From assembly GCF_011386835.1 (NCBI RefSeq), contig NC_088801.1, positions 34,286,001 to 34,350,000 on the forward strand: 64,000 bases of DNA, written 5' to 3'. Positions 20,581 to 26,813 of the stretch are shown here, piece by piece. Under the pieces are notes generated by a model. The model worked only from the letters and a program-made list of their open reading frames with translations, made no database searches and had not been told where the DNA came from. A program made the translations under genes and the position numbers. Every line of letters begins with the position of its first letter. Positions within the stretch are counted from its first letter, which is position 1. Origin of the DNA: Chrysemys picta bellii (lineage: Eukaryota).

Positions 20581-20804
20581 TCGGGGTACGTCTACACTAC
20601 GAAATTAGTTCGAATTTATAGAAGCCGGTTTTATTGAAAACGGTTGTATACAGCCGATTGTGTGTGTCCACACAATAAAATGCTCTAGGTGCTCTAGTCG
20701 GCGGACCGCGTCCACAGTACAAGGCTAGCGTCGACTTCCAGAGCATTGCACTATGGGTAGCTATCCCACAGCTATCCCACAGTTCCCGCAGTCTCCGCCG
20801 CCCC

Positions 20805-22530
20805 TTTGAATTCTGGGTTGAGATCCCAATGCCCGGATGATGCAAAACAGTGTCGCGGGCGGTTCTGGGTACATGTCGTCAGGCCCCTCCCTCCCCCGTC
20901 ACAGCAACGGCAGACAATAGATTCGCGCCTCTTTACCTGGGTTACCTGAGTTACCTGTGCAGACAACATGGAGCCCGCTCAGCTGAGCTCACCGTCACCA
21001 TATGTCCTCTGGGTGTCGGCAGACGTGGGACTGCATTGCTGCACAGCAGCAGCTGCTAACTGCCTTTTGGCGGTAGACGGTGCAGTAGACTGGTAGCCTT
21101 CATCGGCGATCTGGGTGCTGGCAGCCGTGGGGCTTGCCTTTTGGCAGTAAATGGTGTATTACGACTATTAGCCGTCCTATTACAAGTCGGGTCATCGCAC
21201 GTTAGCAGAGTCTTCCCCGAGCAGCCGATTGTGCAATAGGCCTGAAGACCATCGTCATACGCCGCCCCGTATTTGCTGCCAAGCACCCAGAAAGATGCCG
21301 AGGGCTATCAGTCACGCTGCACCGTCGTCTTAAGATGTAAAAAATAGATTTGCTCTGTATTCATTTGCTTCCCCCTCCCTCCGTCAAATCAACGGCCTGC
21401 TAAGCCCAGGGTTTTCAGTTTAATCTTTGGGGGGAACATTCTGTGTGACAGTTGTTTGTGTTTCTCCCTGATGCACAGCCACCGTTCTTGAATTTAATTC
21501 CCTGTGCCTGTACGCCATGTCGTCACTCGGCCCCCCTCCCTCCTTCCCCTAGTCCGTCAGATACTACGTTTGCGCCACAGCTCAGAGAGCCGAGAAGCGG
21601 TTCGCGCCTTTTCTTTGAATTCTGGGTTGAGATTCCAATGCCCGGATGATGCAAAACAGTGTCGCGGGCGGTTCTGGGTACATGTCGTCAGGCCCCTCCC
21701 CCCTCGTCACAGCAACGCAGACAATAGATTCGCGCCTTTTTACCTGGGTTACCTGTGCAGACAACATATCACGGCAAGCATGGAGCCCGCTCAGCTCAGC
21801 TGAGCTCACCGTCACCATATGTCCTCTGGGTGCTGGCAGACGTGGGACTGCATTGCTACACAGCAGCAGCTGCTAACTGCCTTTTGGCGGTAGACGGTGT
21901 AGCATGAGTGATAGCCATGGGGCTGGCAGCCGTAGGGCTGCATTGCACCAGCCCCTTGCCAGGCGATGGTATATTATGACTGGTATCCATCGTCGTCGTA
22001 TTGGTGTGGCTGTCAATCATGGCCACCTGGGCAGACATGCTACTGTTTCGATGATGATGGCTACCAGTCGTAATATACTATTTTCTGCCAATTGCCCAGT
22101 ATTGTCTGCTAAGCACCCAGAAGAGGCCGAGGGCGATGCTGGGTGCTGGCGGACGTGGGGCTGGCAGATGTGGGGCTGCATTGCTACACAGCAGCAGCCC
22201 CTTGCCTTTTGGCAGATGATGGTATTTTATGATTGGTATCCGTCGTCGTCGTACTGGAGAGGCTGTCACTCATGCTGCACCGTCGGCTGCCACCTTAAGA
22301 TGTAAAAAATAGATTTGTTCTGTATTCATATGCTTCCCCTTCCTCCGTGAAATCAATGGCCTGCTAAGCCCAGGGTTTTCATTTTAATCTTTGGGGGGAC
22401 CATTCTGTGTGACAGTTGTTTGTGTTTCTCCCTGTTCCTGTACCTGTACGCCATGTCGTCACTCGGCCCTCCCTCCCTCCCGTCCTCCCTCCTTCTCCTG
22501 GTCCATCAGATACTACTTTCGCGCCTTTTT
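20805..22530 (+). repeat. Two tandem copies (~809 and ~917 bp) in the Harbinger left arm
   Basis: TTTGAATTCTGGGTTGAGAT.CCAATGCCCGGATGATGCAAAACAGTG starts at 20805 and 21614. Shared internal blocks include CTTAAGATGTAAAAAATAGATTTG. Both units end in TTCGCGCCTTTT. Confidence 0.92.
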
Positions 22531-22562
22531 TCTGACCAGGCGCCATAGCTAGCACTGGGATC

Positions 22563-24615: not shown

Positions 24616-25211
24616 CTGGCGGAGGAGAAGGGAGAGGTGGTTAAAAAAGACACATTTTAGAGAACAATGGGTACACTCTTTCATTACAAGGTCGCATATT
24701 TCGGCTTGCAGGCAGCCATCGTAGGCCACAGTGTTTTGGCTTTTTTAACCTTCTTAACATGCGGGAAAGGTTGCAAACAGCAGCGCATTTCCCATATCAA
24801 GGATGAATTGGGTTGTCCATTTAAAATGGGGTTTCAATGTAAAAGGAGTGGCTGCGGTTTCCCGGTTAACATGCGGCACAAACACAAGTAAACCCCCCCC
24901 CCCACACACACACACACGATTCTCTGGGATGAGCACTTCACCCCTCCCCCCACCGCGTGGTTAACAGCGGGGAACATTTCTGGTCAGAAGAGCAGGAACG
25001 GGCGCCTCTGAATGTCCCCTTAATAAAATCACCCCATTTCAACCAGGAGAGCTTTCTGGAGATGTCCCTGGAGGATTTCCGCTCCATCCCCATACACGTT
25101 AACAGACTTTTCCAGTAGATGTACTGGCCGCGATTGCCAGGGCAAAGTAATCATTAAACACGCTTGCTTTTTTTTTGTAATGTTTACAAATAGTTACAAA
25201 GTTACACTCAC

Positions 25212-25752
25212 CAGAGGTCTCCTGTGTGCCCTGAGGGTCTTGGGTGAGTTCGGGGGTTACTGGTTCCAGGTCCAGGGTCACAAACATATCCTGGCTGTTG
25301 GGGAAACCGGTTTCTCCGCTTCCTTGCTGCTGTGAGCTACCTACAGTACCTCCATCGTCATCTTCCTCGTTCCCCGAACCGTCTTCCCTGTGTGTTTCTC
25401 CAGTGAGAGAGTCATAGCACACGGTTGGGGTAGTGGTGGCTGCACCCCCTAGGATCGCATGCAGCTCCGCGTAGTAGCGGCAAGTTTGCGGCTCTGCCCC
25501 GGACCTTCCGTTTGCTTCTCTGGCTTTGTGGTAAGCTTGCCGTAGCTCCTTAATTTTCACGCGGCACTGCTGTGTGTCCCTGTTATGGCCTCGGTCCTTC
25601 ATGGCCTTGGAGATCTTTTCTAATACTTTTCCATTTCTTTTACTGCTACGGAGTTCAGCTATCACTGCTTCATCTCCCCATATGGCGAGCAGATCTCGTA
25701 CCTCCCGTTCGGTCCATGCTGGAGCTCTTTTGCGATCCTGGGAGGACTCCAT
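25212..25752 (-). CDS. Harbinger Myb/SANT-like (trihelix) DNA-binding protein, exon 1
   Basis: MESSQDRKRAPAWTEREVRDLLAIWG...ISKAMKDRGHNRDTQQCRVKIKELRQAY, typical of Myb/SANT-like DNA-binding domains. Donor G|GTGAGT at 25211. First in-frame ATG at 25752. Confidence 0.88.
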
Positions 25753-26813
25753 CACGGTTACCTGTGCTGATGAGCTCTGCGGGGTCACCTGTGCTCTCCA
25801 CGCTGGGCAAACAGGAAATGAAATTCAAACCTTCGCGGGTCTTTTCCTGTCTACCTGGTCAGTGCATCTGAGTTGAGAGTGCTGTCCAGAGCGGTCACAA
25901 TGAAGCACTGTGGGATAGCTCCCGGAGGCCAATAACGTCGAATTCCGTCCACACTACCCCAATTCCGACCCGCAAAGACCGGTTTTATCGCTAATCCCCT
26001 CGTCAGAGGTGGTGTAAAGAAACCGGTTTAAAGGACCCTTTAAGTCGAAAGAAAGGGCTTCGTTGTGTGGACGTGTCCAGGCTTAATTCGGTTTAACGCC
26101 GCTAAAGTCGACCTAAACCCGTAGTGTAGACCAGGCCTTAGAGAGCAAGTTTATTTCCCTTTTGGTTGGGAGCCAGAGTAGGCTGGATGTATTTGACGCC
26201 ACCACTTCCCTCTTTGAGAGTGTTATCTCCAAAGCAGGTAGATGCTCACACTTCATTAACCATAGTTCCCACTGGCTAAATGCTAATCTGCTACTCAACC
26301 CCTACTTTCATCCAAGGCAAAGTGGAAAAAAAGACCTTAGGGTCTCTGGTGGAAAAGAATCAGATACAAACGTGGTAAAATACACTTAAATTATTACCTG
26401 GTATACATCTAACACCAAACAAAATATTAAATAGATTATACTTGAAATAGTTTACAGGCAGTGAACTTCATAGATTCCCTAACCTGCTGGAGATCTGACT
26501 CTTAATATTTCTCACTATTGCACATGATCCTTTGGCCCTGCCATATGATTGGATCCACATAGTTAATATCTTGCAGAAGCATTAAACCATTCCCCTTTCT
26601 GTTATACTATCAGTTTATTTCTATTAAATTCTGCCTCCACCTTGATAAGAGTGTCACCGTAACACCCACTCTCAAACAGTGTCTGCACAGCTCTTAACAC
26701 AAATGAAAACACCATAGATTTACTGACACGCTGAAAAGATCCATTGTCTCCCAAGAACAGATCTAGCACTTATCCATCTACACTTATCCGAGCATATTAT
26801 CCTAGCACATAAC

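What the first reader, a model, noticed from the sequence alone, without database searches (positions are those of the whole stretch)
20584..26137. Apparently intact two-component Harbinger transposon in a vertebrate genome
Seen: both TIRs, an uninterrupted 433-aa transposase with intact DDE, and a partner gene that splices in frame. CpG is abundant, unlike the CpG-depleted flanks and the frameshifted CR1 and Penelope copies nearby. Known: Harbinger needs transposase plus Myb-like protein, and the well-studied vertebrate system (zebrafish Harbinger3_DR) had to be reconstructed from defective copies. Inference: this may be a natively active or very recently active amniote Harbinger, and the driver of the TCTACAC MITEs in the window.
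Basis: partly seen in the sequence, partly recalled or inferred. Interest (0 to 1): 0.75.

Follow-up and report, generated by a model that had tools for sequence, protein, structure and literature searches.

The report
Very young intact turtle Harbinger transposon
This is a real, very young copy of a multi-copy Harbinger "jumping gene" in a painted-turtle-type genome, with both standard genes intact, so the family moved very recently, but the kind is known and present-day jumping is not shown.

Summary
Window 20584-26137 is a 5,554-bp PIF/Harbinger element. It has both inverted ends, an open 433-aa DDE transposase, and a two-exon 347-aa Myb-like gene. CpG o/e is 0.66 against 0.13-0.23 in the flanks.

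The host is an emydid turtle, and the best matches are Chrysemys picta. Nine full-length paralogs were fetched from a C. picta assembly. They lie in unrelated flanks, and eight have perfect 3-bp target duplications. The closest differs from the window copy by 5 substitutions (0.09%), the next by 0.32%. The window copy has 4 private changes, none at its 261 CpGs. "Very recently active" is therefore well supported. "Active now" is untested.

Three qualifications apply:
- This copy has no target duplication of its own (TCG left, TTA right). TTA...TTA frames it only together with the adjacent 288-bp MITE.
- Its subfamily carries an in-frame 225-bp deletion. It removes most of a conserved third ORF (BEN-like; dN/dS 0.28) that related turtle Harbingers keep in the Myb intron.
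- The link to the MITEs rests only on a shared ~11-nt end core.

Turtle Harbingers are in Repbase, and sea kraits have an intact, recently active amniote Harbinger. The scan had already noted Harbingers and the third gene on other DNA of this genome.

The parts
20584..20618 (+). Left terminal inverted repeat. The terminus is GGGTACGTCTACACTACG.
   Evidence: Inverted pair I3. The terminus is fixed by end-to-end alignment with paralogs.
26103..26137 (-). Right terminal inverted repeat. Read inward, the terminus is GGCCTGGTCTACACTACG.
20666..20783 (+). Left subterminal motif blocks: GTCCACACAA at 20666-20675, and AGCTATCCCACAG twice at 20759-20771 and 20770-20782. These are candidate binding sites for the Myb-like protein (inference).
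   Evidence: The same motifs lie at mirrored positions at the right end (pairs I10 and I16).
25908..26072 (-). Right subterminal motif blocks: AGCTATCCCACAG at 25908-25920 and GTCCACACAA at 26063-26072.
20804..22560 (+). Two tandem units of about 810 and 950 bp upstream of the transposase. Each carries a copy of the transposase start context (ATG at 20968 and 21780; the true start is 22563).
   Evidence: Direct repeats D3, D5, D6 and D7 and a self-BLAST at 77-86% identity. The units are present in all close paralogs. Chelydra and Mauremys relatives have only about 360 bp between the end and the ATG.
22563..23864 (+). Transposase gene, 433 aa, with the DDE triad D216, D304 and E340.
   Evidence: The protein is identical to that of paralog L013.
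23981..23986 (+). AATAAA hexamer about 117 nt after the transposase stop. A likely poly(A) signal (inference).
   Evidence: Read from the sequence.
24015..24020 (-). AATAAA hexamer about 95 nt after the Myb-like gene stop. A likely poly(A) signal (inference).
   Evidence: Read from the sequence.
24113..24615 (-). Myb-like gene exon 2, stop codon included. It encodes a basic, coiled-coil-like C-terminal half.
   Evidence: 100% identical to P0136 residues 182-347. The acceptor is CCGCCAG.
24616..25211 (-). Myb-like gene intron, GT...AG.
   Evidence: The same gene model is annotated in paralogs L005 and L007, each 347 aa.
25212..25752 (-). Myb-like gene exon 1, holding the Myb/SANT-like DNA-binding domain.
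   Evidence: Myb_DNA-bind_4 at 3.6e-19. 100% identical to P0136 residues 1-180.
24933..25118 (+). Remnant of the family's third ORF (BEN-like), antisense in the Myb intron. An in-frame 225-bp deletion, with its junction in the AGG at 25045-25047, leaves only the last 23 codons of the conserved part.
   Evidence: Alignment with L004, L003 and L002. The ORF is conserved in Natator, Chelydra and Mauremys elements with dN/dS about 0.28. Language-model features point to BEN.
20293..20580 (.). Adjacent 288-bp MITE with ends GGGCTAGTCTACACTAC and GGCTAGGTCTACACTAA, CpG o/e 1.1. It is not part of the Harbinger but is framed with it by TTA...TTA.
   Evidence: (pairs I5, I15).
20581..20583 (.). TCG spacer between the MITE and the Harbinger left end. 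It does not match the right flank.
26138..26140 (.). TTA at the right flank. It matches the TTA at 20290-20292, left of the MITE.

Best explanation
This is one very young copy of a multi-copy PIF/Harbinger DNA transposon family of emydid turtles, most likely in the painted turtle.

**How it works (inferred from the family, not tested on this copy).** The element moves by cut-and-paste. The 347-aa Myb-like protein binds the element's ends and subterminal motifs and brings the 433-aa DDE transposase into the nucleus and onto the ends. The transposase excises the element and inserts it at a 3-bp target, which becomes duplicated.

**State of this copy.** Both canonical genes and both ends are intact. 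Its subfamily has transposed within roughly the last million years or less, so it is either still mobile or only recently silenced. The subfamily has lost most of a third, BEN-like ORF that older relatives keep in the Myb intron. That ORF is therefore not needed in cis.

**Shown:** the anatomy, the intact frames, the near-identical dispersed paralogs with target duplications, and the absence of CpG decay.

**Inferred:** the mechanism, taken from the experimentally studied Harbinger3_DR system, and the age in years.
For: **Family assignment**
- DDE_Tnp_4 at 6.9e-36 and Myb_DNA-bind_4 at 5e-19.
- The DDE triad is conserved.
- Inverted ends are present.

**Host**
- The top protein hits are Chrysemys picta bellii.

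**Recent mobility**
- Nine C. picta paralogs were compared. Their divergence from this copy is: L013 5 substitutions (0.09%), L006 0.32%, L005 0.81%, L007 1.0%, L001 2.0%, L004 2.3%, L003 2.6%, L002 12%.
- Their flanks are unrelated to the window.
- Their 3-bp target duplications are perfect: CTA, TAA, TAA, TTA, TTG, TTG, TAA.
- The window copy has 4 private substitutions and no transition at any of its 261 CpGs. Older copies show 6 of 20 and 11 of 25.
- CpG o/e is 0.66 against 0.13-0.23 in the flanks.

**Coding state**
- Both genes are open in at least 7 copies.
- dN/dS against the old copy L002 is 0.45-0.5 for the transposase and 0.27-0.55 for the Myb gene. Among young copies it is near 1, as expected for a transposon lineage.

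**Mechanism**
- Both proteins are required; the Myb-like protein imports the transposase and binds the ends (Sinzelle 2008, as summarised in PMC9392472).
Against: - No direct evidence of mobility today. Presence or absence at this locus could not be read from unitig data.
- The RNA library's identical pieces include an unspliced exon-intron boundary and near-terminal sequence, so they may be DNA or read-through.
- This copy lacks its own target duplication, TCG against TTA. That is atypical for a simple insertion.
- The subfamily lacks the conserved third ORF, whose role is unknown. It might depend on relatives in trans.
- The paralog sample was ascertained through annotated intact proteins, so the proportion of intact copies in the genome is unknown.
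- The age in years rests on an assumed turtle mutation rate.
Confidence: 0.85

Rival explanations
1. The element is autonomous and is transposing in present-day painted-turtle germlines.
For: - It differs from paralog L013 by 5 substitutions in 5,554 bp, and L013 has a single private change.
- There are no CpG transitions in the three youngest copies.
- Both ORFs and both ends are intact.
- Two window-private alleles (21492A, 22483T) have depth 158-196 in organism A but zero in organisms B and F, although the left flank is present in all three. This is compatible with a lineage-restricted insertion.
Against: - No polymorphic empty site was seen. The read data were unitigs that break at the repeat.
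- The expression evidence is ambiguous.
- Turtles mutate slowly, so near-identity can persist for hundreds of thousands of years after silencing.
Confidence: 0.35
2. The window's subfamily is functionally non-autonomous. Having lost the conserved BEN-like third ORF, it is mobilised only with help in trans from relatives that still carry the ORF (L003/L004 type).
For: - The third ORF is conserved across emydid, cheloniid, chelydrid and geoemydid elements, with dN/dS about 0.28, so it is useful to the transposon.
- The window subfamily has a 225-bp deletion removing its core.
- Copies with the intact ORF coexist in the same genome. L003 and L004 are 1.7% apart.
Against: - Six of the ten compared copies (this one and nine paralogs), including all the youngest, carry the deletion and still inserted at new sites with target duplications.
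- The reconstructed zebrafish Harbinger needs only two proteins (PMC9392472).
Confidence: 0.2
3. The near-identical copies arose by segmental duplication or gene conversion, not by transposition.
For: Nothing specific. Gene conversion among repeats can homogenise sequence in general.
Against: - Similarity stops exactly at the element termini in every paralog.
- Each paralog has its own 3-bp target duplication in unrelated flanks on different chromosomes.
Confidence: 0.02
4. The two genes are a domesticated host gene pair of the HARBI1/NAIF1 type rather than a transposon.
For: Automatic names such as 'putative nuclease HARBI1' and 'myb/SANT-like DNA-binding domain-containing protein 2' are attached to relatives.
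Against: - The genes lie between inverted ends.
- They are present in many dispersed copies with target duplications.
- dN/dS among young copies is near 1.
- The names are annotation carry-over.
Confidence: 0.01

Closest known systems
Harbinger3_DR of zebrafish (Sinzelle et al. 2008, as cited in PMC9392472)
   Same: - Two-gene architecture: a DDE transposase plus a Myb/SANT-like protein.
- Short inverted ends and a 3-bp target duplication.
- It is the source of the mechanism assumed here.
   Different: - Harbinger3_DR was reconstructed from defective copies. The turtle copy is naturally open in both genes.
- The turtle family has a 1.8-kb duplicated 5' region and, ancestrally, a third ORF in the Myb intron.
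Harbinger-Snek of sea kraits, Laticauda (PMC8437027)
   Same: - An amniote Harbinger with many naturally intact two-gene copies.
- Non-autonomous derivatives.
- Signs of recent or continuing activity.
   Different: - Harbinger-Snek entered by horizontal transfer within the last 15-25 My (PMC8437027) and makes up about 11% of one sea-krait genome (repeat table in PMC8872380).
- The turtle family looks long resident. Homologs at 62-83% aa identity occur across cryptodires and pleurodires.
- I did not test sequence relatedness between the two families.
Repbase turtle and crocodilian Harbinger families. One is the 'Harbinger-1' used for Malaclemys and Trachemys landscapes in bioRxiv 10.1101/2023.08.19.550906; turtles and crocodilians are listed in PMC9179366.
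   Same: The same superfamily in the same host group. The window element very probably belongs to one of these catalogued families.
   Different: - I could not compare with Repbase consensus sequences, which are not available here.
- I found no paper reporting near-identical, doubly intact copies in the painted turtle.
Coelacanth Harbingers (Smith et al. 2012, cited in PMC5381603)
   Same: Harbinger elements with evidence of continuing accumulation in a slowly evolving vertebrate genome.
   Different: A different host lineage. Relatedness was not tested here.
HARBI1 / NAIF1 / MSANTD host genes (PMC9392472)
   Same: Homologous protein domains. Annotation pipelines give these names to the turtle copies.
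   Different: The host genes are single-copy and syntenic and lack inverted ends. The window genes sit in a mobile, multi-copy element.

Membership tests
PIF/Harbinger superfamily of DNA transposons | Transposase with a DDE_Tnp_4 / PIF-type catalytic domain and an intact D-D-E triad | tested here: met
   PF13359 at 6.9e-36 over residues 215-376. D216 and D304 are invariant and E340 nearly invariant in 12 homologs.
PIF/Harbinger superfamily of DNA transposons | A second gene encoding a Myb/SANT/trihelix-like DNA-binding protein | tested here: met
   PF13837 at 3.6e-19 in exon 1. Both exons are 100% identical to the annotated 347-aa P0136.
PIF/Harbinger superfamily of DNA transposons | Short terminal inverted repeats | tested here: met
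   29-nt arms at 83% complementarity. The termini are identical in the close paralogs L005, L006, L007 and L013.
PIF/Harbinger superfamily of DNA transposons | A 3-bp target-site duplication, typically TWA | tested here: inconclusive
   Eight paralogs have perfect duplications: TAA three times, TTA, TTG twice and CTA. The window copy itself has TCG on the left and TTA on the right. TTA/TTA holds only if the adjacent MITE is included.
Currently active (autonomous) transposon | Near-identical copies at non-homologous sites | tested here: met
   Divergence of 0.09%, 0.32% and 0.81% from paralogs in unrelated flanks.
Currently active (autonomous) transposon | Insertion polymorphism among individuals | tested here: inconclusive
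   Unitigs break at the repeat. The left flank-to-MITE junction is seen in three organisms. Two copy-private alleles are seen only in organism A.
Currently active (autonomous) transposon | Germline transcription with correct splicing of both genes | tested here: inconclusive
   An RNA library holds identical pieces, but one spans an unspliced boundary, and no splice joint was among the 15 joints listed, with 158 more not shown.
Currently active (autonomous) transposon | Excision and reintegration in an assay | not testable with these tools
   This needs a bench experiment.
Domesticated Harbinger-derived host genes (HARBI1, NAIF1, MSANTD) | Single-copy, syntenic, no inverted ends, purifying selection on the locus | tested here: not met
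   Inverted ends, target duplications and many dispersed copies. dN/dS is near 1 among young copies.
Three-gene turtle Harbinger (with a BEN-like ORF in the Myb intron; noted elsewhere in this scan) | An intact ~98-codon conserved ORF antisense in the Myb intron | tested here: not met
   The ORF is present in L002, L003, L004, L008, L010 and L011. In the window only the last 23 codons remain after a 225-bp deletion.

The most novel reading that the evidence does not exclude
The painted turtle holds a naturally intact Harbinger that is still transposing. Its youngest subfamily has dispensed with the family's conserved third, BEN-like gene. This particular copy was moved together with a heterologous MITE as a 5.85-kb composite, using the MITE's outer end and the Harbinger's far end. 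That would be direct evidence that the transposase acts on the TCTACAC MITEs.
Probability: 0.2. Interest if true: 0.65.

Novelty: new member of a known kind. Interest (0 to 1): 0.45.

Why it matters
- **Rarity in amniotes.** DNA transposons that are intact and recently mobile are uncommon in amniotes, and turtle genomes are usually described as slow and full of ancient repeats.
- **A natural test system.** A naturally open two-gene Harbinger with paralogs 0.1-0.3% apart would give a native vertebrate Harbinger for transposition assays. Harbinger3_DR was reconstructed from defective copies.
- **A marker system.** The young copies could serve as markers for recent emydid history.
- **A natural experiment.** The contrast between subfamilies with and without the third ORF bears on what that ORF does.
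- **Annotation.** Hundreds of such copies are currently annotated as host genes under misleading names.

Tried and rejected
- **Solved structures.** A sequence search of solved structures with the transposase found no match, so the DDE triad was placed by family alignment instead.
- **Pfam on the third ORF.** No significant family.
- **AlphaFold2 on the third ORF.** With a 7-row alignment, mean pLDDT was 46.9. That is too poor, so I ran no fold search. The BEN assignment rests on language-model features only and on earlier notes.
- **BLAST of the two window MITEs.** No other copies and no internal similarity to the Harbinger, in the window or in 13 loci. The 'driver' claim could not be tested further.
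- **Laying reads.** Only Logan unitigs were available. About 76,000 pieces from the whole family mapped in one run, and no contig bridged the MITE-Harbinger junction or an empty site in the rows shown.
- **Failed call.** An NCBIfam scan failed on a frame slip of mine and was not repeated, since Pfam had settled the question.
- **Mutation rate.** I did not find a turtle-specific yearly mutation rate in PMC9995274, so ages are rough.
- **Spliced protein.** I did not build or search the joined Myb-like protein.
- **Rejected readings.** Segmental duplication and a domesticated gene pair are both rejected (see rival explanations).
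Full report
**What is in the sequence**

Window 20584-26137 is a 5,554-bp element bounded by imperfect inverted repeats. The arms are 20590-20618 and 26103-26131, 29 nt, 83% complementary. The termini are GGGTACGTCTACACTACG and GGCCTGGTCTACACTACG.

On the + strand, ORF 22563-23864 encodes 433 aa without interruption. It matches Pfam DDE_Tnp_4 at 6.9e-36. In an alignment with 11 turtle homologs, D216 (AIDGTHI) and D304 (LGDPAYP) are invariant and E340 (VVECAFGRLK) is nearly invariant.

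On the - strand lies a two-exon gene:
- Exon 1 is 25752..25212, followed by a GTGAGT donor.
- The acceptor is ...CCGCCAG, and exon 2 is 24615..24113.
- The lengths 541 + 503 nt give 347 codons plus a stop.
- Exon 1 carries Myb_DNA-bind_4 at 3.6e-19.

Taken separately by reference, they are 100% identical to residues 1-180 and 182-347 of P0136, a 347-aa protein annotated by NCBI in Chrysemys picta bellii. This confirms the splice model.

CpG o/e is 0.66 in the element, against 0.23 and 0.13 in 10 kb of flank on either side.

**Host and family size**

The transposase's best hits are all turtle proteins, the closest from C. picta bellii at 97% to a cluster representative.
- The 90% transposase cluster holds 23 sequences, and eight of the 15 members listed are 433 aa long.
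- The Myb-like protein's 90% cluster holds 321 sequences.
- Sea-turtle clusters hold hundreds more.
- Many carry misleading automatic names such as HARBI1, MSANTD2 or ZSCAN29-like.
- Laying Logan unitigs of three DNA runs placed 37,000-76,000 pieces on the element, so the family and its relatives are very abundant.

Homologs at 62-83% aa identity occur in emydids, sea turtles, snapping turtles, geoemydids, tortoises and pleurodires. This looks like long residence in turtles.

**How young is it**

I fetched nine full-length paralogs from the C. picta assembly GCA_011386835.2. Divergence from the window copy is:

| Paralog | Divergence |
|---|---|
| L013 | 5 substitutions, no indel (0.09%) |
| L006 | 0.32% |
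| L005 | 0.81% |
| L007 | 1.0% |
| L001 | 2.0% |
| L004 | 2.3% |
| L003 | 2.6% |
| L002 | about 12% |

Similarity ends exactly at the termini, and the flanks are unrelated to the window. Eight paralogs have perfect 3-bp target duplications: CTA, TAA three times, TTA, and TTG twice. These are independent transposition events, not segmental duplications.

Against the column majority of the six youngest copies compared, the window copy has 4 private substitutions, L013 has 1 and L006 has 2. None is a CpG transition, although each element has about 260 CpGs. Older copies show 6 of 20 and 11 of 25.

Assuming about 0.5-1 x 10^-9 substitutions per site per year (my assumption; I did not find a turtle-specific rate in PMC9995274), the window copy is of the order of a million years old or less, and L013 is younger.

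The closest Malaclemys transposases are at most 92% identical. The youngest burst therefore appears to postdate that split, with the caveat that only annotated proteins were compared.

**Selection**

Both genes are open in the window copy and in L013, L006, L005, L007, L001 and L004. The Myb gene is broken in L003 and L002.

dN/dS is noisy and near 1 among young copies. Against the old copy L002 it is 0.45-0.5 for the transposase and 0.27-0.55 for the Myb exons. This is the usual picture of selection along the active lineage and neutral decay after insertion.

**Three qualifications to "intact"**

1. **No target duplication of its own.** The left flank is TCG (20581-20583) and the right flank is TTA (26138-26140).
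   - Immediately to the left lies a 288-bp MITE (20293-20580), and TTA stands on the MITE's far side.
   - TTA...TTA therefore frames MITE + TCG + Harbinger, 5,848 bp in all.
   - Two successive insertions into one TTA would require TTA to become TCG, in an element with only 4 private changes.
   - A composite move, or a non-canonical integration beside a resident end, both remain open.
   - Unitigs joining the left flank to the MITE exist in organisms A, B and F.
   - Two window-private alleles (21492A, 22483T) have depth only in A.
   - This hints that the MITE is older and shared while the Harbinger copy is lineage-restricted, but it does not prove it.
2. **A lost third ORF.** Led by earlier notes of this scan, I checked the Myb intron.
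   - L004, L003 and L002, and elements from Natator, Chelydra and Mauremys, hold a conserved ORF of about 98 codons on the transposase strand.
   - Its dN/dS is about 0.28 across families.
   - Language-model features point to the BEN domain: score 0.93, with 18 of 30 hits in the BEN set.
   - Pfam finds nothing, and my AlphaFold2 model was poor (pLDDT 47), so I could not confirm the fold myself.
   - The window copy and L013, L006, L005, L007 and L001 share an in-frame 225-bp deletion, with its junction in the AGG at 25045-25047. It removes all but the last 23 codons.
   - Loose ends in the read data at 25043-25047 show that undeleted relatives are present in these genomes.
   - Since the deleted subfamily contains the youngest insertions, the third ORF is not needed in cis. 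Whether it is needed in trans is unknown.
3. **An expanded 5' region.** The 1.98 kb between the left end and the transposase ATG contains two tandem units of about 810 and 950 bp. Each holds a copy of the start context, with ATG at 20968 and 21780. Chelydra and Mauremys relatives have only about 360 bp there.

**Mechanism**

By homology with the experimentally studied Harbinger system, both proteins are required. The Myb-like protein imports the transposase and binds the element ends (Sinzelle 2008, summarised in PMC9392472).

The element has mirrored subterminal motifs that are natural candidates for binding by the Myb-like protein:
- GTCCACACAA at 20666 and at 26063-26072.
- AGCTATCCCACAG at 20759 and 20770, and at 25908-25920.

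AATAAA hexamers follow both convergent genes, at 23981 (+) and 24015-24020 (-). These functional roles are inferred, not shown.

**Expression and polymorphism**

One RNA library (X15) holds pieces identical to the window copy. One of them spans the unspliced exon 1-intron boundary, and another lies beside the right end. No splice joint was among the joints listed. Its summed depth is far more enriched on the coding parts than in the DNA runs, but the tool warns that such depth is a poor measure of expression. Transcription is possible but not shown. No empty-site joint was among the rows shown.

**MITE claim**

The window's two TCTACAC MITEs share with the Harbinger only the terminal GG and the core GTCTACACTA(C). 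BLAST found no other similarity. Thousands of related Harbinger copies could equally serve as the transposase source, so the claim cannot be decided here.

**Comparison with what is known**

- Harbingers in turtles and crocodilians are catalogued in Repbase (PMC9179366).
- A 'Harbinger-1' consensus was used for Malaclemys and Trachemys repeat landscapes (bioRxiv 10.1101/2023.08.19.550906).
- An amniote Harbinger with 269 fully intact copies in one species, and RNA reads over the single intact copy of a sister species, is published for sea kraits (PMC8437027).
- Continuing Harbinger accumulation has been reported in the coelacanth (PMC5381603).
- I found no paper on near-identical, doubly intact Harbinger copies in the painted turtle.
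- I found no paper that appears, by title and abstract, to describe a BEN-type gene in Harbingers; two papers matched the search terms and I did not open them.

**Verdict**

This is a new, well-preserved member of a known kind. "Very recently active" is supported, "active now" is untested, and the MITE link is undecided. The scan had already noted Harbinger copies (70 notes) and the third gene on other DNA of this genome.

Noticed in passing
window 20290-26140: TTA...TTA frames the 288-bp MITE plus a TCG spacer plus the Harbinger. Neither element has a matching 3-bp duplication of its own. This may be a composite mobilisation or a non-canonical insertion beside a resident end.
   Followed up: partly
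window 24933-25118 (+); L003:7494-7790, L004:7497-7793, L010:8502-8798, L011:8007-8303: A conserved third ORF (BEN-like by language-model features; dN/dS about 0.28) lies antisense in the Myb intron of related turtle Harbingers. In the window's subfamily an in-frame 225-bp deletion removes all but its last 23 codons.
   Followed up: partly
window 20804-22560: Two tandem units of about 810 and 950 bp lie upstream of the transposase. Each repeats the transposase start context (ATG at 20968 and 21780), which may act as upstream decoy starts. The units are shared by all close paralogs and absent from Chelydra and Mauremys relatives.
   Followed up: partly
window 42159-42426: A second, CpG-poor element of about 270 bp ends in TGTCTACACTAG and, in reverse, CTGTCTACACTAC. 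I found no similarity to the first MITE or to the Harbinger beyond the core.
   Followed up: partly
window 19290-19565 (+) and 26814-27014 (-): Short ORFs with the typical CR1 ORF2 C-terminal tail (…GLFSLEKRRLRGD… and …RVVKHWNKLPREVV…) flank the insertion on both sides. They are old, CpG-depleted LINE fragments. I recognised them from memory and did not scan them.
   Followed up: no
L003 (C. picta CM062342.1), element 1961-8803: This paralog is 6,843 bp long because it carries an extra copy of the 5' tandem unit, so the 5' repeat number varies among copies.
   Followed up: no
L012 (Emydura macquarii), 5001-8452: An annotated 488-aa protein fuses a KRAB domain to a Harbinger transposase. It may be a host-transposase fusion or an annotation artefact in a pleurodire turtle.
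   Followed up: no
L011 (Mauremys mutica), 237-4388 and 5001-8935: Two Harbinger copies of different subfamilies (72% and 74% aa identity to the window transposase) lie head to head within 11 kb.
   Followed up: no
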